Shown: positions 383 through 27,133 of the stretch, piece by piece
How positions within the stretch are numbered: position 1 is the stretch's first letter
Layout: each line of letters opens with the position of its first letter
IMG/VR virus record: IMGVR_UViG_3300025869_002060
Location: 164,349-228,348 of that record
DNA length: 64,000 nt
Reading direction: 5' to 3' (one strand)
Notes under the pieces: model-generated
The model's database searches: none
Seen by the model: the letters and a program-made list of their open reading frames with translations, nothing else
Told to the model about the DNA's origin: nothing
Position numbers and translations under genes: made by a program

Positions 383-700
383 ATGTATCGACCATTGCCA
401 GACGGACTAACTATCCGTGATTCAAATGTACAAGGTCTTGGACTCTTTGCTACACAAGACTTTGTTGAAGATACGGTTTTTGGTATTGTACATATCAAAA
501 ACAAAAACTTTCCTCATGGTTATATAAGGACCGCATTAGGTGCTTTCTATAACCATTCCGAGGAACCTAATTGCAAAACTGTAAAAGGATTCTGGCATCA
601 AGTTCCTGTTGTATACCTTATGAGTACTAGCCCTATTCATGCCAATGACGAACTTACTGCAAAATATACTTTATACAACGATTTTAACGACATACCGTAA
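383..700 (+). CDS. Minimal SET-domain protein (putative lysine methyltransferase)
   Basis: SET motifs GLGLFA, YNHSEEPNC, ELTAKY. Confidence 0.85.
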   Translation: MYRPLPDGLTIRDSNVQGLGLFATQDFVEDTVFGIVHIKNKNFPHGYIRTALGAFYNHSEEPNCKTVKGFWHQVPVVYLMSTSPIHANDELTAKYTLYNDFNDIP

Positions 701-787: not shown

Positions 788-1417
788 ATGGACGACGAAG
801 CACTTATTAAATCTGTCAGGGTTACTGATAGGTCTGACAGCGATTTTATGGTGGGTAGAGAGATTGAACATACTCCAGCCTACAATATGCAAACTTTGTT
901 TTTGCCTAAAATATATCCAGTTAAATTTATTATGTCGGTTAAACCAAAACATTGTACACACCTTTACTTTGGTGCAAACAAAGGTTTTCCAGAAACTGTT
1001 GACTCTAAAGAGTTCAAGATATGGGAACTGACTGTACTTGCTTTTCTTAAGAAAGGCTTCTGGTGTACACTAGATTTTCAACCACACCATTGGAACTTGG
1101 TTATGAATTCCAAACTTATCAACGAACCGCGTTTTATTCCGTTGGTGTCTTTGGAAGTACCCGGAATTGAACGTGCAAATTATAATACTTGTATCAAACT
1201 TGACGACACAGGTATTGAAGCAACCAATGGTGGTGTATGGGTGCATGAACTTCACAACTTACGTACACGTGAAACATTTACACGTTGGGACGAATACCGA
1301 GGTGATAAGCATCATAAATTTTTAACTCAAGGTGTTAATGATCGTAAACGTGTTTATGGATTATGCATGGAAGACGATGTAATTAAAAACAAATCTACAA
1401 AGGAAGATGAACAATGA
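788..1417 (+). CDS. Hypothetical protein heading the 7-deazaguanine-associated cluster
   Basis: 209-aa ORF whose TGA overlaps the ATG of the QueD-like gene (ATGA coupling); no family recognised. Confidence 0.75.
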   Translation: MDDEALIKSVRVTDRSDSDFMVGREIEHTPAYNMQTLFLPKIYPVKFIMSVKPKHCTHLYFGANKGFPETVDSKEFKIWELTVLAFLKKGFWCTLDFQPHHWNLVMNSKLINEPRFIPLVSLEVPGIERANYNTCIKLDDTGIEATNGGVWVHELHNLRTRETFTRWDEYRGDKHHKFLTQGVNDRKRVYGLCMEDDVIKNKSTKEDEQ

Positions 1418-1848
1418 GCGCCAATGATAACATAGTCAGCTTAACTGGAAAAGGTATGGATAAGTCCAGCGAAGTTATTGGATTAGCAAAAAGAATGATT
1501 TGGGTTACTTTTACCAAAGAAGGTATGCATTGTTATCCTGCCGCGGCAACTGATCCTAACCTTGCCACTGGTGATGAATATGATGTAAGTTTTCTTGCTC
1601 ACCCACACAGACATATCTTTCATTTTCGTGTAGCTATTGAAGTATTTCATGACGATAGAGATATTGAATTCATTCAGTTTAAACGTTGGTTAATGAAACT
1701 GTTTGAAGGCGAACTAAACGTAGACTATAAGTCATGTGAGATGATTGCAGATGACTTATACAGAGAAATTGCAACCATTTATCCAGGACGTGATGTTACT
1801 ATTCATGTGTCTGAAGATGGTGAAAATGGTTGCGAAATTCAGTATTAG
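1414..1848 (+). CDS. QueD/PTPS-like T-fold protein (second QueD paralog)
   Basis: His-rich HPHRHIFHFRV metal-binding stretch, DRDIEF, SCEMIA and VSEDGENG motifs resemble QueD/PTPS T-fold enzymes. Confidence 0.7.
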   Translation: MSANDNIVSLTGKGMDKSSEVIGLAKRMIWVTFTKEGMHCYPAAATDPNLATGDEYDVSFLAHPHRHIFHFRVAIEVFHDDRDIEFIQFKRWLMKLFEGELNVDYKSCEMIADDLYREIATIYPGRDVTIHVSEDGENGCEIQY

Positions 1849-1852
1849 ACAC

Positions 1853-1881
1853 TTGACAAACTTGCTAGAACATATTACAAT
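1853..1881 (+). promoter_or_regulatory. Sigma70-type promoter
   Basis: TTGACA-17nt-TACAAT. Confidence 0.7.
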
Positions 1882-1925: not shown

Positions 1926-2165
1926 ATGAAGTCCGAAGTCACAGCAATATTCGACGATCTCGATCAATACCGTCAGTTTTGTGTGCAGTTTGGGAGGCCC
2001 TATAATGAACGGGATCTCTACAATAAGTCCAACAATCACTATGTTGATTTTTTGGCATTCAAGGAAGGCAAACGAATTCGTAACCACTGGAATAGCCAGT
2101 CCAAGAAGAAGCGACCGTTTGTGAAAAAGAGCAATTATAAAATGGCCAAGAGGAAACATGCGTAA
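1926..2165 (+). CDS. Hypothetical basic protein
   Basis: 79-aa ORF downstream of a promoter, overlapping the next start. Confidence 0.7.
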   Translation: MKSEVTAIFDDLDQYRQFCVQFGRPYNERDLYNKSNNHYVDFLAFKEGKRIRNHWNSQSKKKRPFVKKSNYKMAKRKHA

Positions 2166-3339
2166 ATTATTCTATATGGGTTTAGAACCCTACGAAGGTC
2201 GATACACTTTACAACTTCAAGATTGGAGCACTGAAGTGTTCGACCGCCGGGGGATTGACTATGTTGTCGTTCCCGGAACTACAATAGATGACACTAAAGC
2301 AATTAGTGTTGGGCAAGTACTAGATGCACATGGTCGTTCATACTTTGGTATGAGTCAGTTGATGAACCTGGTACAGATGATGCGAAATGGAGAATGTACT
2401 GGTGAAGATGTTGTATTCTTTGAAGACATGTTTCAGCCTGGTATGGAATCATTACCTTATATCATGTGTCAGATACCAGAAGAGCAACGACCTAAGATTT
2501 TTCTACGTTGTTTAGCCCAGGCAATTGACCCAGATGACTTTGTTCATGTATGGGGTATGAGCAAGTGGATGTCATTGTACGAACAGATGTGCAACGAAAT
2601 TCCTAATGTTCATATTCTAGCAACCAATGAAGAGATGGTTGCACACATGAAGATTGCAAACTGGACTGCTCCAATTTATAACATCTCAGGTTTGAGTTTT
2701 GGTAAAGCAGAAGTTCAAAGACGTATTGATAACAAAATTAAACCGTGGACAGAACGTAGCGACAGAGTAGTATTTGCGGCTCGCTTTGACCAAGAGAAGC
2801 AACCAGACTTCTTTATGGATGTTATTGAAATGGTCAAAGAGAAAAGGCCTGATGTTGAGTTTGCAGTACTAAGTGGTGGTCCATTGCGTAGTAATAATGA
2901 AAAGTATTTGGATCGAGCACTTGCAATGCAGGCTGAAGGTAAACTTACAATACTGAAATACTTGCAAAAGAATGATTACTACTATACAGTAAATGATAGC
3001 AAAGTATTGTTTAATTGTGCATTGCAAGACTGGGTAAGCAATACTGTAAGTGAAGCAGATGCATTGGGTTGTAACGTGGTGTATCCTGCTTACAGAAGTT
3101 TTCCTGAAACGTTTGCAAATGATTATACACGTCTGTATACTCCGTGGAGCAAAGAAGATGCAGTAAGTAAAATCATGCAAGGTCTTTTGGAACCAAGTCC
3201 TAATATGGGTAAAATCAGTAACTGGACTGATGGTACTATTGATCGTATGATTGATATTATGGAAGGCAGTTACAAACACAATACTTGGTTACGAAGTGGT
3301 AACAGGTATCGTGATCATGTAGCGGAAGGGAAATACTAA
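2158..3339 (+). CDS. GT-B fold glycosyltransferase (GT4-like)
   Basis: C-terminal domain motifs VFAARFDQEKQP and NCALQDWVSNTVSEADALGCNVVYP. Confidence 0.8.
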   Translation: MRKLFYMGLEPYEGRYTLQLQDWSTEVFDRRGIDYVVVPGTTIDDTKAISVGQVLDAHGRSYFGMSQLMNLVQMMRNGECTGEDVVFFEDMFQPGMESLPYIMCQIPEEQRPKIFLRCLAQAIDPDDFVHVWGMSKWMSLYEQMCNEIPNVHILATNEEMVAHMKIANWTAPIYNISGLSFGKAEVQRRIDNKIKPWTERSDRVVFAARFDQEKQPDFFMDVIEMVKEKRPDVEFAVLSGGPLRSNNEKYLDRALAMQAEGKLTILKYLQKNDYYYTVNDSKVLFNCALQDWVSNTVSEADALGCNVVYPAYRSFPETFANDYTRLYTPWSKEDAVSKIMQGLLEPSPNMGKISNWTDGTIDRMIDIMEGSYKHNTWLRSGNRYRDHVAEGKY

Positions 3340-3340
3340 G

Positions 3341-4339
3341 ATGCCTGAAAACACCGTATTAATTACCGGCAGTGATGGCTACGTTGGTAGCCATGTTGCT
3401 AAAGCATTTAAAGATATCAGTTGGTATGTGTGCGGTTTAGATCGCACTGGTGCAAATGAAAATGCACGTTCATACTGTAACGAGTTTTTACGTGCTGATT
3501 ACGGTGAGAGTAAGGTCGTTGGAAAGTATATTGAAACTATCAAACCAGATGTTATTGTACATTGTGCTGGTACTAGTCTAGTAGGTCCAAGTGTTACAGA
3601 TCCGCATGCCTACTATCAGAACAATGTACTTGGTACAATCAATTTATTAGACAATATAATTAACGTACAAAAAGATAATTTACCTGTTGTGCTTTTTAGT
3701 AGTTCAGCAAGTGTTTATGGCAATCCCGAACAACTTCCAATCACAGAAGATAGCAAGATCAATCCTGTAAACCCATATGGTAATACAAAGTCAATAATTG
3801 AAACCATGCTCAAAGACTATGCTAGTGCATACGGATTGAACAGTGTATCATTTCGTTTCTTTAATGCCGCTGGTGCCAGTGAAGATCTTGGTCAAGTGTT
3901 TGGTGCTACTCATATTATTGCTCGCATACTTGAAGCCAAGTTACGCCAACGACAGTTTACTTTGTATGGTACAGATTATAAAACTGAAGATGGTACTTGT
4001 GTTAGAGATTATGTACACGTAAAAGATATTGCTCAGGCACACCTAAACGCCGTTACAAAATACACAGCCGTTGGTGCCAATGCATTTAATCTTGGCACTA
4101 GCAAAGGATTCAGTAACCAAGAGATTATTGATGCGGTGGTAGAACAAATTGGCGAATTCGAAGTAGAAAAAGGACCACGCAGAGAAGGTGATCCAGATAT
4201 GCTAATAGCCAGCAGTGATAAAGCAAAAACACAACTAGGTTGGGATCCAGTAAATAGTAACTTAGACACAATTATCAATGACGTATGGGCTTGGTATAAC
4301 GTACTACTAGAGAAACAAAAAGAGCAAGAACAGGCATGA
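3341..4339 (+). CDS. galE: UDP-glucose 4-epimerase
   Basis: TGSDGYVGSH Rossmann motif, FSSSASVYG, YGNTK (YxxxK), FRFFNAAGA, GTCVRDYVHV. Confidence 0.9.
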   Translation: MPENTVLITGSDGYVGSHVAKAFKDISWYVCGLDRTGANENARSYCNEFLRADYGESKVVGKYIETIKPDVIVHCAGTSLVGPSVTDPHAYYQNNVLGTINLLDNIINVQKDNLPVVLFSSSASVYGNPEQLPITEDSKINPVNPYGNTKSIIETMLKDYASAYGLNSVSFRFFNAAGASEDLGQVFGATHIIARILEAKLRQRQFTLYGTDYKTEDGTCVRDYVHVKDIAQAHLNAVTKYTAVGANAFNLGTSKGFSNQEIIDAVVEQIGEFEVEKGPRREGDPDMLIASSDKAKTQLGWDPVNSNLDTIINDVWAWYNVLLEKQKEQEQA

Positions 4340-4929
4340 GTTTTAGTCATATACAGGAGTTTGAGGAGCAATTAGCACTATATACTGGTGCCAAGTGGGC
4401 CGTAATGACAGACACCTGTACCAATGCATTAGAACTATGTTTTAGGTACGATGAAGTTAAAGAATGCCAGTTTAGTGCATATACCTACCTAAGCATTTAT
4501 CAGTTATTACATAGATTGGATATCTCTTATACACTTACAGAAGAAGTATGGAGAGGCCAATATCATTTTGAAAATACCCGTATTTGGGATAGTGCAAGAT
4601 TACTTAAAAAGAATATGTATCAACCAGGACAATTACAATGTTTAAGTTTTGGTTATGACAAACCCTTATATCTCGGTTGGGGTGGTGCGATCCTAACCGA
4701 CGACCCGGCGTTCTACAAACATACGATTCAGCAACGTTATGACGGGCGGAACCTCTCAGTTACTCCATGGGAAACAGAAATACTTCCACGTATTGCATTC
4801 CATATGAGACCTACCCCTGAGATTGCACTAGATGGACTAGAACGATTAAGGACCGGAGATATAAGTAAACTTCCACCAAAGGCCGCTGACGAATTATATC
4901 CAAATGGAAAAGATATAAAATGGAAATAA
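4336..4929 (+). CDS. Truncated DegT/DnrJ-like PLP-dependent protein
   Basis: FEEQLALYTGAKWAV, CTNAL, WDSA, SFGYDKPL (PLP lysine) and GGAILTDD; 197 aa versus about 370-400 aa for typical DegT proteins. Confidence 0.75.
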   Translation: MSFSHIQEFEEQLALYTGAKWAVMTDTCTNALELCFRYDEVKECQFSAYTYLSIYQLLHRLDISYTLTEEVWRGQYHFENTRIWDSARLLKKNMYQPGQLQCLSFGYDKPLYLGWGGAILTDDPAFYKHTIQQRYDGRNLSVTPWETEILPRIAFHMRPTPEIALDGLERLRTGDISKLPPKAADELYPNGKDIKWK

Positions 4930-4945
4930 AACCTAATATTACTAC

Positions 4946-4974
4946 TTGACAATAACTCTAAATAAAGGTATAAT
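4946..4974 (+). promoter_or_regulatory. Consensus sigma70 promoter upstream of the folE unit
   Basis: TTGACA-17nt-TATAAT. Confidence 0.85.
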
Positions 4975-5225: not shown

Positions 5226-5924
5226 ATGAGTGAACTAATATCTAAAATTATCACAGATCGTGTAAAAGAATCAGGCGACCGCTACTGGGCTGGTGATAAT
5301 ATTTCTAAACATATCCATAACGAATACGAAAAACAAGATTTAATTAATGAAATTGCAGTAGCATTTGAAGATGTTCTTGATGCATTGGTTATTGATAGAT
5401 TCAATGACCCTAACAGTATGGATACTGCAAGACGTCTTGCTAAAATGTATATTAATGAAGTTATGAGTGGCAGGTACGACCCAATGCCTAAGGCAACAGC
5501 CTTTCCTAATCATGTAGATGATGGATACAAAGGTATGTTGGTTGTACGTTCAGAACTTAAAAGTATGTGTTCGCATCATCATCAACCAGTAAGCGGTGTT
5601 GCATACATTGGTATTATTGCCGCAGAAACACTAATTGGTCTTAGCAAGTATACACGTATTGCTCAATGGTGTGCAAGGCGAGGTACACTACAAGAAGAAC
5701 TTAATAATGTTATTGCTAACGAGATTCAAAAAGCAACAGGTAGTCCTAACATAGGTGTTTACGTTCAGGCCACTCATGGTTGTTGCGAAAACAGAGGCAT
5801 TATGGCACATAGTAGTTTAACACAAACAACTGTACTTAGAGGTGCATTTAGTGATGATCCAGGCACTAAGAAAGAGTTTATGGATAACATTAAACTGCAA
5901 CAAGAGTTTGCTTGTGGAAAATAA
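5226..5924 (+). CDS. folE: GTP cyclohydrolase I
   Basis: TARRLAKMY, SMCSHHHQP, GLSKYTRI, LQEEL, HGCCENRG; GGAG RBS. Confidence 0.95.
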   Translation: MSELISKIITDRVKESGDRYWAGDNISKHIHNEYEKQDLINEIAVAFEDVLDALVIDRFNDPNSMDTARRLAKMYINEVMSGRYDPMPKATAFPNHVDDGYKGMLVVRSELKSMCSHHHQPVSGVAYIGIIAAETLIGLSKYTRIAQWCARRGTLQEELNNVIANEIQKATGSPNIGVYVQATHGCCENRGIMAHSSLTQTTVLRGAFSDDPGTKKEFMDNIKLQQEFACGK

Positions 5925-6385
5925 AGAGCACAGTTTTTGGTGCTAGAAAGGAAGTTATGTTTTTAAAGTTACTTGATCGATTAGGTCGAAAAAGAATTGT
6001 TTACGATAGGTTGGATGACGAGCCTTATCTTGAACGTTACTATGTGTTTATTAAAGAAAGAAAACACTTTCCTTTCAATATTTTCCTACACAAATTTCTT
6101 AAAAGCGATCCAGATGATTTACACGATCATCCTTGGGGATATGCTACACTTATTCTTAAAGGTGGATATTGGGAGCATACCCCCGACGGAAAGTTTTGGA
6201 GAGGTCCCGGACATTTTAGAATGTGCAAGTCCAACAATACACACAGAATTGAACTAGACCCTGATGTTCAAGCCTGGACATTGTTTATGCCCGGACCACA
6301 AAGGAAAGACTGGGGATTTATCAAAGACGGTAAATGGATTCAACACGAAAAATATCTTTCATCTAGAAAAATGTTAAAGGAATGA
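5912..6385 (+). CDS. Cupin-fold protein
   Basis: LHDHPW...ILKGGYWE and later HRIEL cupin metal motifs. Confidence 0.7.
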   Translation: MWKIKSTVFGARKEVMFLKLLDRLGRKRIVYDRLDDEPYLERYYVFIKERKHFPFNIFLHKFLKSDPDDLHDHPWGYATLILKGGYWEHTPDGKFWRGPGHFRMCKSNNTHRIELDPDVQAWTLFMPGPQRKDWGFIKDGKWIQHEKYLSSRKMLKE

Positions 6386-6906
6386 CAATGAATAAACTCT
6401 ATATTGACGATACTCAGATTAAAAATGCATGTCATTCCATTGTAACAAAAATGTATAGAGATAACTTTAAACCTAAATACATTGTAGGAATTACACGCGG
6501 CGGGCTAGTTCCAGCTTTATACCTAAGTCATATGACTGGTATTACAATGCATACACTAGATGTTCGTTTACGTGATGGTGATGAACAAGAATCAAATCTA
6601 TGGATGGCCGAAGATGCATTTGGTTATCCTAATCAAGACAGTGGCGGACAAGGAAAAAATATTTTAATTGTAGATGATATAAATGACACTGGTGCAACGT
6701 TCAACTGGATTAAACAAGATTGGCCCTCAGGGTGCTTACCTAACGATCTTCGTTGGAATGAAGTATGGCATAACAATGTACGTTTTGCAAGTATTATTGA
6801 CAATATGGGTAGCAACTTCAAGGTTGACTATTCAGAAATTGAGATTAATAAATCCGAGGAGGATGTGTGGGTAGTATTTCCGTGGGAAGAACCTTTAAGG
6901 GTCTAG
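6382..6906 (+). CDS. Type I phosphoribosyltransferase (xanthine/guanine PRT-like)
   Basis: VGITRGGLVPA, PRPP-binding ILIVDDINDTGAT, C-terminal WVVFPWE. Confidence 0.9.
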   Translation: MTMNKLYIDDTQIKNACHSIVTKMYRDNFKPKYIVGITRGGLVPALYLSHMTGITMHTLDVRLRDGDEQESNLWMAEDAFGYPNQDSGGQGKNILIVDDINDTGATFNWIKQDWPSGCLPNDLRWNEVWHNNVRFASIIDNMGSNFKVDYSEIEINKSEEDVWVVFPWEEPLRV

Positions 6907-7109: not shown

Positions 7110-7678
7110 TGCTTGGATTTTATCCAAATTTTAAAATCACATGCAATGTAGATTGGACTGAACTGTCATTACGTGTCACTGACACGGCTATAAATTATGT
7201 TCACACAAACAAATACAAAGAAAATATATTATACGAAAGTGTAAACAGTATCGTAGCAAGTCTACCTACAGGTGGTTGGATAAGCAAGAGTGGTCCAAGT
7301 TTTGATTTCTTTGTAATGGGCGGAATACCCGAAACCGAAATATTAGATAATTGGTTTAAAAAACAATTTCCAAATTTAACATTTACCCCAGCAACAATTT
7401 GTTGGAGTAGTAAAAATGTTCCGTTGCACAGAGACAACATAAAGAACGGACAATCAAGTTTAGTATATCCTATATCAAATAATAGTGGATACGGAACTGT
7501 ATATAGCAACGATGCCAAGTTCACTTATGGTACCGAAAAACATAAACCTGTTGTAATCAATATAACTGTTGATCACGAGGTAGTAATTACTGAACCAAGA
7601 GTCTGGTTCAGTATTCATATGCAAGAACCAATTAAAATGGTTAAAGAAGTACTTGACAATTATGCAAATAACGTATAG
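7109..7678 (+). CDS. Putative 2OG-Fe(II) oxygenase-like protein
   Basis: PLHRD (HxD) plus distal His (VDHEV) in a beta-rich fold pattern. Confidence 0.5.
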   Translation: MLGFYPNFKITCNVDWTELSLRVTDTAINYVHTNKYKENILYESVNSIVASLPTGGWISKSGPSFDFFVMGGIPETEILDNWFKKQFPNLTFTPATICWSSKNVPLHRDNIKNGQSSLVYPISNNSGYGTVYSNDAKFTYGTEKHKPVVINITVDHEVVITEPRVWFSIHMQEPIKMVKEVLDNYANNV

Positions 7679-7706
7679 TATTAAATATTATAAAGGTGAT
7701 TTCTAA

Positions 7707-8198
7707 ATGACATACTACAGTACAAAAACATACGGACACAACATAGGACTAAGTGCAGTGTTCCGTCAACCAAATGCAGATCACTCACATTGCCATTTGT
7801 TACATGGTTATAGTTTGCAGTTTAAATTTACATTTGGTTGTTCTGAATTAGATAAAAAAAACTGGGCCGTTGACTTTGGTGGATTAAAACCACTCAAAGC
7901 ATGGCTTGAAGATAGCTTTGATCATAAGACAGCAATTGATATTGCTGATCCTCATAAACAAGAATTTTATGATTTGCAGGACAAAGACTTATGTGAAGTA
8001 AGAGAATTTGACGGGGTTGGTGCAGAGAAGTTTGCAGAACATGCATGGCGCTTTGCAGACAAACTCGTCAAAGAAATGACAAATGGACGTTGTTGGTGTG
8101 AGAGTTGTGAGTGTGCAGAACACGGGGCAAATTCTGCTATTTATTCTCCGTATGTCGTACAAAAAACCTCGTTCAAGGAGAACCATAATGAACAATAA
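7707..8198 (+). CDS. queD: 6-carboxy-5,6,7,8-tetrahydropterin synthase
   Basis: HCHLLHGY, WAVDFGGLK, FDHK, AEKFAEH, CAEHGANSA motifs. Confidence 0.9.
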   Translation: MTYYSTKTYGHNIGLSAVFRQPNADHSHCHLLHGYSLQFKFTFGCSELDKKNWAVDFGGLKPLKAWLEDSFDHKTAIDIADPHKQEFYDLQDKDLCEVREFDGVGAEKFAEHAWRFADKLVKEMTNGRCWCESCECAEHGANSAIYSPYVVQKTSFKENHNEQ

Positions 8199-8523: not shown

Positions 8524-9396
8524 ATGAACTGGCGTTATAGCGAAGAATTTTATAGTATACAAGGTGAAGGCAAATTTGTAGGAGTACCTAGTGTATTTTT
8601 ACGTATGTTTGGTTGCAACTTTCGTTGTAAGAACTTTGGTAGATCCAAAGACGAAACCTTTGCTAAAAACGAACCAAATCCTGAAGTGCAAGAAGTTATT
8701 GATAATATTGATCAATACGAGAATTTTGGAGATTTACCAATTGTGCATACTGGTTGCGATACGTATGCAAGTATCTATCCGCAGTTTAAACGTTTTATGA
8801 AAAATCTTAACACTGACGAGGTAGCTGAACGTTTACTAGCATTAACACCAAATGGTTCATGGACCATGCCCAATGGGCAAGATATTCATCTAATTATAAC
8901 TGGCGGAGAGCCATTGCTTGGTTGGCAAAAAAATTATGTTGAATTATTTAATCATCCGAAAATGAAAGATTTAAAAAATGTTACAATCGAAACAAATGGT
9001 ACTCAAGCTCTTAGACCGGAGTTTGTTGACTTTATCACACATCAAGAAAGAATATGTATTACTTTCTCGTGTAGCCCAAAGTTATCCGTTTCGGGAGAGT
9101 CTTGGAGTGATGCTATTAACCCTGACATTGTTAGCACTTACTATAATCTTCCTAATAGTGATTTGTATCTTAAGTTTGTGGTTAACGATGATGTGGATGT
9201 GGACGAAGTTAGCAGAGCTACTGAAGAGTATCGTGCGGCCGGGGTTGAGTGTCCAGTATATACTATGCCGCTTGGCGGACGGTATGACGAGTATAAAGCA
9301 ACGACTAAAAGGGTCGCAGAACTCGCAATGCAAAAAGGGTGGAGATATACACCCAGACTACACGTTGATATCTTCGGAAATGCATGGGGCACGTAA
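8524..9396 (+). CDS. queE: 7-carboxy-7-deazaguanine synthase (radical SAM)
   Basis: EFYSIQGEG, FLRMFGCNFRC...GCDT, ITGGEPLL, IETNGT, SPKL, PRLHVDIFG. Confidence 0.92.
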   Translation: MNWRYSEEFYSIQGEGKFVGVPSVFLRMFGCNFRCKNFGRSKDETFAKNEPNPEVQEVIDNIDQYENFGDLPIVHTGCDTYASIYPQFKRFMKNLNTDEVAERLLALTPNGSWTMPNGQDIHLIITGGEPLLGWQKNYVELFNHPKMKDLKNVTIETNGTQALRPEFVDFITHQERICITFSCSPKLSVSGESWSDAINPDIVSTYYNLPNSDLYLKFVVNDDVDVDEVSRATEEYRAAGVECPVYTMPLGGRYDEYKATTKRVAELAMQKGWRYTPRLHVDIFGNAWGT

Positions 9397-9469
9397 GAAA
9401 GAAACGCCATTAGAAAAGGCTATGAAAGCACCCATTGACATTGACAAACTGAGGAACCGAGGATTTTGA
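9380..9469 (+). CDS. Possible 29-aa micro-ORF
   Basis: MHGARKKETPLEKAMKAPIDIDKLRNRGF bridges the queE end and the next start with overlaps at both ends. Confidence 0.35.
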   Translation: MHGARKKETPLEKAMKAPIDIDKLRNRGF

Positions 9470-10137
9470 CCAAAGTAGTACACACCCAAATAGTATGTGG
9501 AATGCCACACCTACTATCAAATTTTGATTTGAACCTAAATCATCTTAGCAAAGAACTTGGAGACATACACTGGCATTTTATGTATGATCGTCCCGGTGAT
9601 GCAACAGTAAAAGGTGAGCGTGTTTATCAAAGTTTTCTACGTCTTGATTTTGACATTGTAGATACATTTAAAGAAGATGATGTACTTCATATTGTTACAA
9701 CAGGAGAACAAGTTGACGATGCTATCTTTAAGACTGTACATACATTTGGTAAAAATAAAATTACCTTGTACAGTATTGGGATAATTATTGATAAGGGTTC
9801 ACTTGTTAAAGCTATAACTGCAAAAAATAGAGACTTAGAGTTTTGGGCCAATCACAGAAATTTTAAACGTGTTACACGTTCAAAAGAAATATTAGCCTCA
9901 TTTAATACGTATCCTAGTATTGATTTTAATTGTGCTGGAATACTATATTGTGCAAACTATGTTAGGTACATATACCAGTTTGCAGATATACTAAAGAAAC
10001 AAGTTACTGTTAAAAATATGTACTTCTTTGGTAACATTAAACCATATCAAGTACTTGATATTGTTCAGGACGAACACGGCATACATATTATTAGTGAAGA
10101 CCGATTAATAGCAACTTGTATATGCGAACTAGAATAG
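9466..10137 (+). CDS. Double-hotdog protein resembling the Pnap_2097/LnmK-related biosynthetic family
   Basis: GMPHL...LSKELGDIHW, ERVYQSFL, DFNCAGILY, YFFGNI motifs recalled from that family. Confidence 0.55.
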   Translation: MTKVVHTQIVCGMPHLLSNFDLNLNHLSKELGDIHWHFMYDRPGDATVKGERVYQSFLRLDFDIVDTFKEDDVLHIVTTGEQVDDAIFKTVHTFGKNKITLYSIGIIIDKGSLVKAITAKNRDLEFWANHRNFKRVTRSKEILASFNTYPSIDFNCAGILYCANYVRYIYQFADILKKQVTVKNMYFFGNIKPYQVLDIVQDEHGIHIISEDRLIATCICELE

Positions 10138-11222: not shown

Positions 11223-11251
11223 TTGACTTAATCAAAAATATGTATTATACT
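11223..11251 (+). promoter_or_regulatory. Sigma70-type promoter
   Basis: (GG)TTGACT-17nt-TATACT. Confidence 0.75.
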
Positions 11252-25527: not shown

Positions 25528-25825
25528 GATTACCAAGAAAGACAAGTGGGAACGAATACTAAACGATGTTGATAAAGCTCAAGTTCCAATCACTTGTTTG
25601 GAGTCGTTAGACGTTAATCTTAAAGACGGGTCTGTAGTAAGAATTGATATTCAGGAATTGCTTGACGAAGGTCAGCTACACCCTGATGAAATTGAGCTAC
25701 AAATTAATACTCGTTTATCCGATATGGAAGATATTATACGAGATGTAGATTTTTATATTAATCTCGACTCAGTTGCAAATAGTGTGCAACCATTAACAGA
25801 TAAAATATTAAAGGATCTTACATGA
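25469..25825 (+). CDS. Hypothetical protein
   Basis: 118 aa, basic N-terminus and acidic body. Confidence 0.7.
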   Translation: MSKVPQPAKRRRGPKSKRLKITKKDKWERILNDVDKAQVPITCLESLDVNLKDGSVVRIDIQELLDEGQLHPDEIELQINTRLSDMEDIIRDVDFYINLDSVANSVQPLTDKILKDLT

Positions 25826-26328
25826 TATCAGCATTACTAGCAGTAGATTCAAGAGGAGGAATGGGATATAAAGGCACATTGCCTTGGTATGTTCCAGAAG
25901 ACTTGCAAAAGTTTAAAGACCTCACTATGAATAATGTTGTAGTAATGGGAAGAAAGACTTGGGACGATAAGAAGATGCCCAAGCCATTGGTAAACCGAAC
26001 TTGTTACGTAGTAACTTCTCGCCCTGATACACTAGGTGATCATGCTTTACCAATTAACGGAACTAACCTTGAGAAGTCCATATTAGATTTAGAATTCAAA
26101 CATCAAGATAAAAAAATATATGTTATTGGTGGACCTAAAATAATCATGCAGGTTCATAATATATTAGATCAAATACACATCACTCAAATTCAAGGTCAAT
26201 TTAAAACTGATGTTAGAATCAATGTTGACAATTTAGTAACTCGTGATTTTATTCCAAGAAGCAGTTCATCAGGGCCAGACCAAAAAGCGACATTTATACG
26301 TTATGAAAAATTATTTAAACGCCATTAA
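25822..26328 (+). CDS. folA: Dihydrofolate reductase
   Basis: GMGYKGTLPW..PEDLQKFK, VVMGRKTW, PLVNR, VIGG. Confidence 0.93.
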   Translation: MISALLAVDSRGGMGYKGTLPWYVPEDLQKFKDLTMNNVVVMGRKTWDDKKMPKPLVNRTCYVVTSRPDTLGDHALPINGTNLEKSILDLEFKHQDKKIYVIGGPKIIMQVHNILDQIHITQIQGQFKTDVRINVDNLVTRDFIPRSSSSGPDQKATFIRYEKLFKRH

Positions 26329-27133
26329 AGAAGTACTAATAAACGGACAAGAACGCAGAGATCGCACCGGCGTTGGTACCATTGGTTTATTTGGTATGCA
26401 ACAACGTTATGATCTAAACAAAGGTTTCCCAGCAGTAACTACAAAGAAACTTGCATGGAAAAGTGTAGTTAGCGAGTTGCTCTGGTTCTTAGAAGGCAGT
26501 GGCGACGAACGTAGACTAGCCGAAATATTACACAAAACAAGAGATGAAAACAAGAAAACTATCTGGTCTCCTAATGCAGAAGCAGACTACTGGTTACCTA
26601 ATGCGGAATACAAAGGCGACCTTGGTAGAGTGTATGGTGTACAATGGCGTGAATGGGGAACAGATCAAATTGAAAAACTAATTGAAGGTATTAAACAAGA
26701 TCCATTTTCACGTAGACATATACTAAGTGCATGGAATGTAGGCGAGCTAGATCTAATGGCATTACCACCATGTCATATTATGGCTCAGTTTTATGTTAGC
26801 ACAGACAACAAATTAAGTTGTCAAATGTACCAACGAAGTTGCGACATGTTTCTTGGAGTACCATTTAACATTGCAAGTTATAGTCTACTCACACATATGA
26901 TTGCCCAAGTATGCAATCTAAAAGTAGGCGAGTTTGTGCATACATTAGGCGATGCACATATATATCTTAACCATGTCAATCAAGTTAAAGAACAACTTGC
27001 AAGAGAACCGTTGCCTTTACCTACACTTTGGCTAAATCCAGAAAAAAGACATATTGATCATTTTACAATGGATGATATACGTTTGCAGAATTATCAAAGT
27101 CACGAAACAATTAAAGCGGAGATGGCAGTATGA
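26303..27133 (+). CDS. thyA: Thymidylate synthase
   Basis: DRTGVGT, TTKKL, ELLWFL, ALPPCH, YQRSCDMFLGVPFN, DAHIYLNH; start refined to MKNYLN. Confidence 0.95.
   Translation: MKNYLNAIKEVLINGQERRDRTGVGTIGLFGMQQRYDLNKGFPAVTTKKLAWKSVVSELLWFLEGSGDERRLAEILHKTRDENKKTIWSPNAEADYWLPNAEYKGDLGRVYGVQWREWGTDQIEKLIEGIKQDPFSRRHILSAWNVGELDLMALPPCHIMAQFYVSTDNKLSCQMYQRSCDMFLGVPFNIASYSLLTHMIAQVCNLKVGEFVHTLGDAHIYLNHVNQVKEQLAREPLPLPTLWLNPEKRHIDHFTMDDIRLQNYQSHETIKAEMAV

What the first reader, a model, noticed from the sequence alone, without database searches (positions are those of the whole stretch)
1414..1848. Two QueD paralogs: one canonical, one divergent (possible CDG decarboxylase)
7707..8198 has canonical QueD features (CxxLHGY, DFG, FDH). 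1414..1848 has a different His array (HCYP...HPHRHIFH) and a C-terminal SEDGENG (seen). A QueD-like paralog, DpdL, has been predicted to decarboxylate CDG to 7-deazaguanine in phages lacking QueC (established prediction). With queC absent here, this ORF fits that role (inference).
Basis: partly seen in the sequence, partly recalled or inferred. Interest (0 to 1): 0.6.

Follow-up and report, generated by a model that had tools for sequence, protein, structure and literature searches.

The report
Phage DpdL, a QueD-like enzyme

Summary
Window 1414-1848 (+) is a real 144-aa gene in a ~350-kb-class uncultured jumbo phage related to Pseudomonas phage PA5oct. It has no Pfam or NCBIfam hit. It is homologous to the two named DpdL proteins: Acidovorax phage ACP17 (53% identity) and Cellulophaga phage phiST CGPG_00067 (32%).

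It carries the published DpdL signature LxxxHRHxF as LAHPHRHIF. Its predicted fold is a QueD/PTPS-type T-fold (pLDDT 87; VIA-align Z 11). It keeps QueD's three metal-binding His and two Glu, and has Leu in place of QueD's catalytic Cys.

The cluster holds FolE, a phage-type QueD and QueE. A TGT-like DpdA candidate lies 1.8 kb upstream of the window. No QueC is found in the 228-kb record, nor above threshold in 11 of 12 complete DpdL phages.

The decarboxylase activity itself remains an untested prediction.

DpdL is also repeatedly linked to a GT4-type glycosyltransferase, a sugar epimerase and an XPRT-like phosphoribosyltransferase. This leaves open a glycosylated product or a nucleotide-level route.

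Verdict: new member of a known kind, moderate interest.

The parts
788..1417 (+). 209-aa protein of unknown function ('F12'), translationally coupled to dpdL
   Evidence: No Pfam, PHROG or NCBIfam hit. Its stop overlaps the dpdL start. Homologue beside DpdA in ACP17 (E 7.5e-10) and in metagenomic L012. Present in 49 of 62 eligible IMG/VR loci just upstream of DpdL. The Atlas search was uninformative.
1414..1848 (+). DpdL-family QueD-like T-fold protein (the finding)
   Evidence: Homology to ACP17 and phiST DpdL. Signature LAHPHRHIF. AF2 pLDDT 87 with a beta-beta-alpha-alpha-beta-beta fold. Foldseek top hit is E. coli QueD 4ntk at probability 1.0. VIA-align Z 11.5-10.4 to PTPS/QueD. hhalign to a QueD set gives 81%, E 1.2e-5. 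Catalytic-site residues are invariant in 203 sequences.
1926..2165 (+). 79-aa conserved small ORF between dpdL and the glycosyltransferase
   Evidence: Homologue at the same place in L012 and in 40 of 59 eligible IMG/VR loci. No family hit.
2158..3339 (+). GT4/GT-B type glycosyltransferase, acceptor unknown
   Evidence: Pfam Glycos_transf_1, 37.2 bits, 2.7e-9. Homologues lie beside DpdL or DpdA in ACP17, X1, PA5oct, Phosso, BCSR5 and BUCT-ZZ01. 70% identical to the BUCT-ZZ01 GT that follows its DpdL.
3341..4339 (+). NAD-dependent nucleotide-sugar epimerase (GalE-like)
   Evidence: Pfam Epimerase 2e-50. phrog_540 nucleotide-sugar epimerase. Related ORFs in L012 and PA5oct.
4336..4929 (+). Half-length DegT/DnrJ/EryC1-like protein
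   Evidence: Pfam PF01041 2.1e-10, N-terminal part only. Conserved in 27 of 49 eligible loci.
5226..5924 (+). FolE, GTP cyclohydrolase I
   Evidence: Pfam 9e-38 and phrog_2197 3.5e-43. Present in 46 of 47 eligible loci.
5912..6385 (+). 157-aa protein of phrog_4786 (labelled 'cysteine dioxygenase'), role unknown
   Evidence: phrog_4786 7.1e-38. No Pfam or NCBIfam hit. Homologue in L012.
6382..6906 (+). Purine phosphoribosyltransferase, XPRT-like
   Evidence: Pfam Pribosyltran 1e-11. NCBIfam xanthine PRT 8.5e-14, below the curated cut-off. Homologues in the clusters of PA5oct, L012 and BUCT-ZZ01.
7707..8198 (+). Phage-type QueD (CPH4 synthase), CxxxHGY variant
   Evidence: Pfam PTPS 3.8e-12 and phrog_2389 2.2e-38. 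108 phage records carry this type, including QueC-bearing phages.
8524..9396 (+). QueE, radical-SAM CDG synthase
   Evidence: phrog_2076 2.1e-51 and a weak Radical_SAM hit. Homologous to the annotated QueE of PA5oct, X1, Ahp1 and ACP17.

Best explanation
ORF 1414-1848 encodes a DpdL-family enzyme. DpdL is a QueD/PTPS-like T-fold protein. This one keeps the three-His metal site (H39, H65, H67) and the two substrate-anchoring Glu (E109, E134) of QueD. It has lost QueD's catalytic Cys (Leu61 instead) and gained its own invariant residues: R82, E85 and C108 in all 203 sequences, and H79 in 199 of 203.

It belongs to a phage 7-deazaguanine DNA-modification module. FolE, QueD and QueE make 7-carboxy-7-deazaguanine (CDG) from GTP. 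With no QueC to turn CDG into preQ0, DpdL most likely removes the 7-carboxylate by a metal-assisted, non-oxidative decarboxylation to give 7-deazaguanine. The TGT-like DpdA candidate just upstream of the window would then exchange this base for guanine in phage DNA, which protects it from host nucleases.

Shown here: family membership, fold, conserved site, gene context, absence of QueC. Inferred: the metal, the substrate, the decarboxylation, and the order of steps.
For: - **Homology to named DpdL.** tblastn and blastp hit ACP17 ASD50405.1 (53% identity, about 1e-31 to 1e-38) and phiST CGPG_00067 (32%, 6e-7 to 3e-12). The paper names both as DpdL and gives the signature LxxxHRHxF. The ORF reads L61-A-H-P-H65-R-H67-I-F69.
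- **Fold.** AF2 pLDDT 87. Foldseek's best hits are E. coli QueD and PTPS at probability 1.0. VIA-align gives Z 11.5-10.4, rmsd 2.2-2.6 A over 94-108 residues.
- **Residue mapping.** hhalign of DpdL against a QueD set gives 81%, E 1.2e-5, and maps H65, H67, E109 and E134 onto QueD H31, H33, E86 and E110. H39 to QueD H16 and L61 to C27 rest on the full-length alignment, which is not significant alone.
- **Conservation.** H39, L61, H65, H67, R82, E85, C108, E109 and E134 are invariant in 203 distinct sequences.
- **Pathway genes.** FolE, QueD and QueE lie in the same cluster.
- **QueC.** No QueC in the own record. None above threshold in 11 of 12 complete DpdL phages.
- **DpdA candidate at G000:161043-162512.** It has the DSGGFQ and FDC motifs, matches ACP17 DpdA at E 8e-5, and the ACP17 protein hits TIGR00449 at 4.6e-7. 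hhalign to E. coli Tgt gives 90.5% and Atlas features point to TGT clusters. It lies about 2.4 kb upstream of DpdL in 70 of 70 eligible IMG/VR loci.
- **Experimental support in relatives.** phiST DNA contains dDG (PMC10516641). DNA of PA5oct, which has a syntenic cluster, resists G-site restriction enzymes (PMC12191111).
Against: - No biochemical proof exists for any DpdL. The authors expressed phiST and ACP17 dpdL with their dpdA in E. coli and detected no dDG.
- The ORF matches no curated family model and no solved structure by sequence, so function rests on context.
- A GT4 glycosyltransferase, a sugar epimerase and an XPRT-like PRT are linked to DpdL in several lineages. The simple CDG to DG to DNA scheme does not need them.
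- In tubercidin biosynthesis the equivalent decarboxylation is done by a UbiD enzyme on the nucleotide, not the base.
- The own genome record is about 65% complete, so a QueC elsewhere cannot be excluded.
- A complete 328-kb relative has two PP-loop ORFs with weak QueC-like C-termini.
Confidence: 0.6

Rival explanations
1. DpdL is a decarboxylase that works on the nucleotide, not the free base. The cluster's XPRT-like phosphoribosyltransferase first joins CDG to PRPP, as TubE does in tubercidin biosynthesis. DpdL then decarboxylates 7-carboxy-7-deaza-GMP. The product enters the dNTP pool and is built into DNA by the phage polymerase, alone or alongside DpdA.
For: A purine PRT lies in the cluster. 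It recurs in PA5oct, metagenomic L012 and cyanophage BUCT-ZZ01 and in 25 of 53 eligible IMG/VR loci. TubE is CDG-specific and refuses 7-deazaguanine, and decarboxylation follows ribosylation in a QueC-less pathway. phiST has a MazG-like pyrophosphatase and a kinase-like AAA protein flanking DpdL. This order would explain why DpdL plus DpdA alone gave no dDG.
Against: A DpdA-type transglycosylase is tightly linked to DpdL (70 of 70 loci), which argues for base exchange. The PRT is missing from the DpdL neighbourhoods of ACP17, X1 and phiST. The PRT could simply salvage the guanine that DpdA releases. The paper's model of DpdL suggested a base-sized pocket.
Confidence: 0.15
2. DpdL is not a decarboxylase. 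It carries out another metal-dependent step on CDG, CPH4 or a pterin. The final DNA base in the GT-bearing phages is then a different, possibly glycosylated, 7-deazaguanine derivative.
For: Activity has never been shown. A GT4 glycosyltransferase sits beside DpdL or DpdA in 8 of 13 lineages, and a sugar epimerase lies in three clusters (own, L012, PA5oct). A GT that glycosylates the 2-amino group of a 7-deazapurine exists in huimycin biosynthesis. The identity of the PA5oct modification is unknown.
Against: phiST has DpdL, no GT in the region examined, and its DNA contains dDG. Something must remove the carboxyl group there, and DpdL is the only enzyme-like candidate the authors found. The GT could act after decarboxylation without changing DpdL's role.
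Confidence: 0.15
3. It is a second CPH4 synthase (a redundant or specialised QueD) that backs up the phage QueD, which lacks two of E. coli QueD's three zinc ligands in alignment.
For: QueD/PTPS are the closest folds. The ORF keeps all three His and both Glu of QueD, whereas the annotated QueD has Phe and Tyr at two His positions.
Against: Leu61 replaces the Cys that QueD needs for activity, in 203 of 203 sequences. The Asp-His pair of QueD (D70, H71) has no counterpart in the alignment. No PF01242 hit. The CxxxHGY QueD type also occurs in QueC-bearing phage genomes, such as phiSM, Iggy, Erebus and RHEph06, that did not appear among the DpdL hits.
Confidence: 0.05

Closest known systems
DpdL (proposed 7-carboxy-7-deazaguanine decarboxylase) of Cellulophaga phage phiST (CGPG_00067) and Acidovorax phage ACP17 (ASD50405.1); Cui, Hutinet et al., NAR 2023
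   Same: Direct sequence homology (32% and 53% identity). Same signature LxxxHRHxF, and the three His and two Glu shared with QueD. Same size core of about 120 aa. Same context with FolE, QueD, QueE and a DpdA, without QueC.
   Different: Variable N-terminal extension of about 25 residues. The host phage is a PA5oct-like jumbo phage. The DpdA candidate is a different, longer TGT-like subfamily (489 aa) than phiST DpdA3, for which no match was found. The cluster also holds a glycosyltransferase, an epimerase and an XPRT-like PRT, which the paper's main text does not mention.
QueD, 6-carboxy-5,6,7,8-tetrahydropterin synthase (E. coli, PDB 4ntk), and PTPS
   Same: T-fold with beta-beta-alpha-alpha-beta-beta topology (Z about 11). 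The metal-binding His triad and the two Glu align.
   Different: 18-24% identity and no Pfam PTPS hit. The catalytic Cys27 is Leu. The Asp70-His71 pair is not conserved. DpdL has its own conserved residues: R82, E85 and C108 invariant, H79 in 199 of 203. It coexists with a true QueD in the same cluster.
Tubercidin pathway: TubE (CDG phosphoribosyltransferase) plus TubF (UbiD decarboxylase), Streptomyces tubercidicus
   Same: A QueC-less deazapurine pathway in which CDG loses its carboxyl group. A purine PRT is encoded beside FolE, QueD and QueE homologues.
   Different: The decarboxylase there is a prFMN-dependent UbiD enzyme, unrelated in fold to DpdL. The product is a free nucleoside antibiotic, not a DNA base. 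No DpdA is involved.
Metal-dependent non-oxidative decarboxylases of aromatic acids (e.g. 5-carboxyuracil decarboxylase IDCase, LigW; amidohydrolase superfamily). Recalled from established knowledge, not tested here.
   Same: A possible chemical analogy: a divalent metal binds the carboxylate of a heteroaromatic acid, and a nearby acid protonates the ipso carbon.
   Different: Entirely different fold (TIM barrel versus T-fold). The analogy is mechanistic only.

Membership tests
DpdL | Detectable sequence homology to the founding members (phiST CGPG_00067, ACP17 DpdL) | tested here: met
   tblastn 6e-7 (phiST) and 4e-31 (ACP17), with hits falling exactly on those genes. blastp 2.9e-12 and 9e-39.
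DpdL | Signature LxxxHRHxF in place of QueD's CxxxHGH | tested here: met
   L61-AHP-H65-R66-H67-I-F69. L61, H65 and H67 are invariant and R66 is present in 201 of 203 family sequences.
DpdL | Three His and two Glu shared with QueD; fourth His displaced | tested here: met
   hhalign maps H65, H67, E109 and E134 to QueD H31, H33, E86 and E110. H39 to H16 rests on the full-length alignment, not significant alone. H79 (199 of 203) has no counterpart at QueD H71.
DpdL | QueD-like T-fold | tested here: met
   AF2 pLDDT 87. Foldseek gives QueD/PTPS at probability 1.0. VIA-align Z 11.5-10.4. This is a predicted model, not a solved structure.
DpdL | Genome encodes FolE, QueD, QueE and a DpdA but no QueC | tested here: met
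   FolE, QueD and QueE. TGT-like DpdA candidate 1.8 kb upstream of the window. No QueC in the 228-kb record, which is 65% complete. Same pattern in 11 of 12 complete DpdL phages; D479 has a partial 32.8-bit QueC-like hit.
DpdL | CDG decarboxylase activity, or dDG in virion DNA | not testable with these tools
   Never shown for any member. The published heterologous test was negative.
QueD / PTPS (PF01242) | Match to the family model | tested here: not met
   No Pfam or NCBIfam hit at E up to 0.1. The family profile finds no QueD among PDB sequences.
QueD / PTPS (PF01242) | Catalytic Cys in CxxxHGH | tested here: not met
   Leu61 at that position in 203 of 203 sequences.
DpdA / TGT superfamily (for the 489-aa neighbour at G000:161043-162512) | TGT-like catalytic motifs and profile similarity to Tgt | tested here: met
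   DSGGFQ and SFDC motifs. hhalign to E. coli Tgt gives 90.5%, E 1.4e-6, over 99 columns. Atlas features score 0.93 to clusters carrying TGT. The Pfam TGT model itself does not hit, and the AF2 model was too poor to use (pLDDT 48).

The most novel reading that the evidence does not exclude
In this phage and its many relatives DpdL is one step of a longer pathway, not a simple CDG to 7-deazaguanine to DNA route. The conserved partners are the GT4 glycosyltransferase, the nucleotide-sugar epimerase, the XPRT-like phosphoribosyltransferase and the unknown 209-aa protein. Two outcomes would follow. Either 7-deazaguanine in DNA is further glycosylated, for example on N2 as in huimycin and dapiramicin. 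Or the deazaguanine is made as a nucleotide, tubercidin-style, and incorporated during replication. Either would be a DNA hypermodification route not yet described.
Probability: 0.2. Interest if true: 0.75.

Novelty: new member of a known kind. Interest (0 to 1): 0.35.

Why it matters
DpdL is the only proposed enzyme for making 7-deazaguanine itself as a DNA base, and its activity has never been demonstrated.

This work shows the family is far larger than the roughly two dozen cultured phages that carry it. More than 8000 protein clusters at 90% identity and at least 594 IMG/VR contigs hold relatives. Many of the fetched loci share the gene order of this PA5oct-like jumbo phage, and several relatives lie on contigs of about 350 kb.

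The active-site residues are absolutely conserved. That gives precise targets for mutagenesis: H39, H65, H67, R82, E85, C108, E109 and E134.

The recurrent neighbours (glycosyltransferase, PRT, 209-aa protein) are concrete candidates for the 'other unknown enzymes' that the original authors suspected when their reconstitution failed. They could guide a successful assay.

If the modification turns out to be decorated deazaguanine, it would add a new kind of phage DNA hypermodification. That bears on restriction evasion and on sequencing of such genomes.

Tried and rejected
- **Family models.** Pfam, NCBIfam and PADLOC-independent family scans gave nothing for the ORF. PHROGs gave only an unnamed family, phrog_17812.
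- **Sequence search of PDB.** A profile search with the family alignment found no QueD, only noise.
- **Nucleotide search.** megablast of 12 kb against phages gave no match.
- **First profile comparison.** The first hhalign against four phage QueDs was weak (17.8%). Adding E. coli QueD raised it to 81%.
- **Known DpdA types.** phiST DpdA3 and ACP17 DpdA used as tblastn queries found no clear DpdA in the own genome. The Pfam TGT model finds nothing in the own genome, nor in five DpdL phages (ACP17, phiST, Phosso, RHph_I1_18, PA5oct), two of which the paper reports to encode a DpdA, so its silence is uninformative. The candidate came from synteny with PA5oct and a weak pairwise match.
- **Fold of the DpdA candidate.** The AF2 model failed (pLDDT 48) and was not searched.
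- **The 209-aa neighbour.** It stayed unexplained.
- **Possible fusions.** DpdL fusions in Vibrio phage Bakedbeans gp176 and Chryseobacterium phage MA9V-3 XQU63047 gave no informative partner domain.
- **GT acting on pyrimidines.** A role in a 5hmC or 5hoC glycosylation route is not supported. The only ThyA homologue is a full-scoring thymidylate synthase next to DHFR.
- **GT acting on pterins.** A link to pterin glucosyltransferases was not seen; PDB sequence hits are generic GT4 enzymes.
- **QueC-like ORFs.** The PP-loop ORFs of a complete relative have no homologue in the own record.
- **Literature.** The supplementary tables of the DpdL paper are not held.
Full report
**What is there.** The window is the last 64 kb of a 228,348-bp IMG/VR virus record estimated at 65% complete. 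ORF 1414-1848 (+) encodes 144 aa. An AGGAAG ribosome-binding-like site lies 7 nt before the ATG. The ATG overlaps the stop codon of the upstream ORF 788-1417 (ATGA), which suggests coupled translation.

The second gene, 7707-8198, is a QueD by Pfam (PTPS, 3.8e-12) and PHROGs (phrog_2389 'QueD-like', 2.2e-38).

**What the ORF is.** It matches no Pfam or NCBIfam model. In PHROGs it matches only an unnamed family (phrog_17812, 1.7e-30). A tblastn search of 50,697 phage records found 28 records.

Among them are Acidovorax phage ACP17 (53% identity, 4e-31) and Cellulophaga phage phiST (32%, 6e-7). The matches fall exactly on ASD50405.1 and CGPG_00067. These are the two proteins that Cui, Hutinet et al. 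(NAR 2023, PMC10516641) named DpdL, the proposed 7-carboxy-7-deazaguanine (CDG) decarboxylase.

That paper defines DpdL by three features. QueD's CxxxHGH is changed to LxxxHRHxF. Three His and two Glu are shared with QueD. A fourth His is displaced. The window ORF reads L61-A-H-P-H65-R-H67-I-F69.

**Fold and residue mapping.**
- An AlphaFold2 model built on 25 homologues has mean pLDDT 87 and the beta-beta-alpha-alpha-beta-beta order of a T-fold.
- Foldseek's best PDB matches are E. coli QueD (4ntk) and PTPS, at probability 1.0 and 18-20% identity.
- VIA-align gives Z 11.5-10.4, rmsd 2.2-2.6 A, to PTPS and QueD, just above other T-fold enzymes at Z 8-10.
- Profile-profile comparison with a QueD set that includes E. 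coli QueD gives 81% probability, E 1.2e-5.
- It maps H65/H67 to H31/H33, E109 to E86 and E134 to E110. H39 to QueD H16 and L61 to C27 come from the full-length alignment (E 0.11), which is consistent but not significant by itself.

In 203 distinct family sequences H39, L61, H65, H67, R82, E85, C108, E109 and E134 never vary. The set includes cultured phages, metagenomic proteins and IMG/VR loci. R66 is kept in 201 sequences and H79 in 199. The 'SCE' cysteine (C108) and R82/E85 are family-specific invariants that the paper's main text does not single out.

**Context.** All on the + strand and downstream of the ORF lie, in order:
- a 79-aa ORF;
- a GT4-type glycosyltransferase (2158-3339);
- a GalE-like epimerase;
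- a half-length DegT-like protein;
- FolE (5226-5924);
- a phrog_4786 protein;
- an XPRT-like phosphoribosyltransferase (6382-6906);
- two unknown ORFs;
- QueD (7707-8198);
- QueE (8524-9396).

BLAST of the whole record against fetched phage loci shows synteny with Pseudomonas jumbo phage PA5oct and Sinorhizobium phage Phosso. The shared order is DNA polymerase, clamp, a roughly 500-aa protein, glycosyltransferase, DpdL, PRT, QueE and a flap endonuclease.

**The DpdA candidate.** The roughly 500-aa protein is at G000:161043-162512, 1.8-3.3 kb upstream of the window start. The evidence that it is a DpdA:
- It is 36% identical to PA5oct EST35_0316.
- It aligns weakly to ACP17 ASD50403.1 (E 8e-5) through a DSGGFQ motif.
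- ASD50403.1 hits the TGT superfamily model TIGR00449 at 4.6e-7 and is 38% identical to the Xanthomonas phage X1 protein annotated as queuine tRNA-ribosyltransferase.
- hhalign of this family against E. coli Tgt gives 90.5% and lines up SFDC with Tgt's MFDC.
- Language-model features also point to TGT clusters.

I take it as the DpdA of this phage. The fold could not be confirmed, because the AF2 model reached only pLDDT 48.

**QueC.** The Pfam QueC model finds nothing in the own record. Because the record is incomplete, I tested 12 complete genomes of DpdL-bearing phage lineages. Eleven have no above-threshold QueC. Vibrio phage D479 has one partial hit of 32.8 bits, C-terminal region only.

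A complete 328-kb IMG/VR relative has NAD synthase and two PP-loop ORFs with weak QueC-like C-termini. These have no homologue in the own record. The pairing of DpdL with a missing QueC therefore holds broadly, as the paper stated.

**How it most likely works.** FolE, QueD and QueE convert GTP to CDG; this is the established pathway, as summarised in PMC10516641. With no QueC, CDG is the branch point.

DpdL keeps a QueD-like metal site and the Glu residues that in T-fold enzymes hold the 2-amino-4-oxo ring. It lacks the Cys that QueD chemistry needs. The most economical reading is therefore a metal-assisted decarboxylation of CDG to 7-deazaguanine, followed by DpdA-catalysed exchange into DNA.

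Two observations in other phages fit this. phiST DNA contains dDG. PA5oct DNA resists restriction enzymes with G in their sites.

The steps shown here are membership, fold, site conservation and context. The chemistry is inferred. The only published attempt to show it was negative.

**What the simple scheme does not explain.** A GT4-type glycosyltransferase lies next to DpdL or DpdA in 8 of 13 lineages examined: the own phage, metagenomic L012, PA5oct, Phosso, ACP17, X1, BCSR5 and cyanophage BUCT-ZZ01. The window's GT is 70% identical to the BUCT-ZZ01 GT, although the two DpdL proteins share only 37%.

An XPRT-like PRT recurs in the own phage, L012, PA5oct and BUCT-ZZ01. The 209-aa upstream protein recurs in ACP17 and L012.

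In 80 IMG/VR loci the linkage to DpdL is as follows.

| Neighbour | Present / eligible loci |
|---|---|
| DpdA candidate | 70 / 70 |
| Clamp | 68 / 68 |
| FolE | 46 / 47 |
| 209-aa protein | 49 / 62 |
| Glycosyltransferase | at least 37 / 60 |
| PRT | 25 / 53 |

The main text of the 2023 paper mentions neither glycosyl- nor phosphoribosyl-transferases.

Two precedents make these neighbours meaningful. In QueC-less tubercidin biosynthesis TubE ribosylates CDG, and not 7-deazaguanine, before a UbiD enzyme removes the carboxyl group. In huimycin biosynthesis a glycosyltransferase loads GlcNAc onto the 2-amino group of a 7-deazapurine.

Two rivals follow. DpdL may act on the nucleotide. Or the final base may be a decorated deazaguanine. 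A plainer alternative for the PRT is salvage of the guanine released by DpdA; this is my inference.

**Abundance.** The word-index search returned its ceiling of 8000 scored clusters, all with E at or below 0.001. The top hits are 66-92% identical, unnamed, and without Pfam domains, and several come from Tara and other aquatic sources. The DpdA candidate has more than 7000 relatives, several on contigs of about 350 kb.

**Verdict.** The gene is a new member of the known, still uncharacterised, DpdL family. Interest is moderate.

The value added here is fourfold: the conserved catalytic-site map, the DpdA candidate, the scale of the family, and the recurrent glycosyltransferase, PRT and 209-aa partners that may explain the failed reconstitution.

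No alternative code was used.

Noticed in passing
outside the window: G000:C1:161043-162512 (= L011:6044-7513, window coordinates about -3305..-1836), + strand: 489-aa TGT-like protein with DSGGFQ and SFDC motifs, the likely DpdA of this phage. It has more than 7000 metagenomic relatives at 76-91% identity among the best hits, with no Pfam hit. It is a DpdA subfamily distinct from phiST DpdA3 and from the ACP17/X1 type.
   Followed up: partly
window 2158-3339 (+), with 3341-4339 and 4336-4929: A GT4-type glycosyltransferase followed by a GalE-like epimerase and a half-length DegT-like protein. The GT is 70% identical to the GT downstream of DpdL in Synechococcus phage BUCT-ZZ01, although the DpdLs are only 37% identical. 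That suggests the GT moves between phage lineages together with this pathway. Its acceptor is unknown.
   Followed up: partly
window 6382-6906 (+): An XPRT-like purine phosphoribosyltransferase inside the deazaguanine cluster. It recurs in PA5oct, a metagenomic relative and cyanophage BUCT-ZZ01. It recalls the CDG-specific TubE of tubercidin biosynthesis, or it may salvage guanine released by DpdA.
   Followed up: partly
window 7707-8198 (+): The 'canonical' QueD has Phe and Tyr where E. coli QueD has zinc ligands His16 and His33 (CxxxHGY). Phage QueDs that lack His16 have a His directly before the catalytic Cys (HC), while the one that keeps His16 (RHph_I1_18) has EC. This looks like a migrated metal ligand. 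The type is common in phages, including ones with QueC.
   Followed up: partly
window 9466-10137 (+): A 223-aa protein with NCBIfam hits to LnmK-family acyltransferase/decarboxylase (2.2e-13) and Pnap_2097 family, directly after QueE. It was found in only 1 of the 80 related IMG/VR loci, the near-identical contig, so it is specific to this phage.
   Followed up: no
window 5912-6385 (+): A 157-aa protein of phrog_4786 (labelled cysteine dioxygenase) between FolE and the PRT. In relative L012 its homologue (145 aa) is followed by a 2OG-Fe(II) oxygenase-like ORF just before the PRT. An oxygenase in this cluster could matter for further base decoration.
   Followed up: no
window 383-700 (+): A 105-aa SET-domain protein (Pfam SET 1.6e-9) just upstream of the cluster. 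This is unusual for a phage. It is inserted between the DpdA candidate and DpdL relative to most related contigs.
   Followed up: no
window 1853-1881, 4946-4974, 7653-7681, 11223-11251 (+): Near-consensus sigma-70 promoter-like sites (10-12 of 12 matches) in short gaps just before gene blocks: after dpdL, before the FolE block, before QueD and before the flap endonuclease. The total count of sites is not above shuffled expectation.
   Followed up: no
window 25822-27133 (+): DHFR (Pfam 4e-30) followed by a full-scoring thymidylate synthase (363 bits). There is no sign of a hydroxymethylase-type ThyA homologue in the record.
   Followed up: yes
L097:781-1677 (+) and L100:1495-2292 (-), in complete 328-kb relative G001; also Vibrio phage D479 at 153872-154066: PP-loop ATPase ORFs (SGGxDS) whose C-termini weakly match QueC (22-33 bits, CxxC motif). 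They lie 40-100 kb from the DpdL cluster and have no homologue in the window's record. They could be QueC-like amidotransferases of unknown role.
   Followed up: partly
L009:11245-12396 (Vibrio phage Bakedbeans gp176) and L106:7395-8276 (Chryseobacterium phage MA9V-3 XQU63047.1): DpdL is annotated as the C-terminal part of longer proteins (383 and 293 aa). The N-terminal parts match nothing, so these are either true fusions or start-codon calls that run through an upstream gene.
   Followed up: partly
L011:4159-5154 and L011:7747-8208 (own genome, upstream of the window): A class I SAM methyltransferase-like ORF lies between the DNA polymerase and the clamp. A small MotA/ExbB-like membrane protein lies between the DpdA candidate and the window start.
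   Followed up: no
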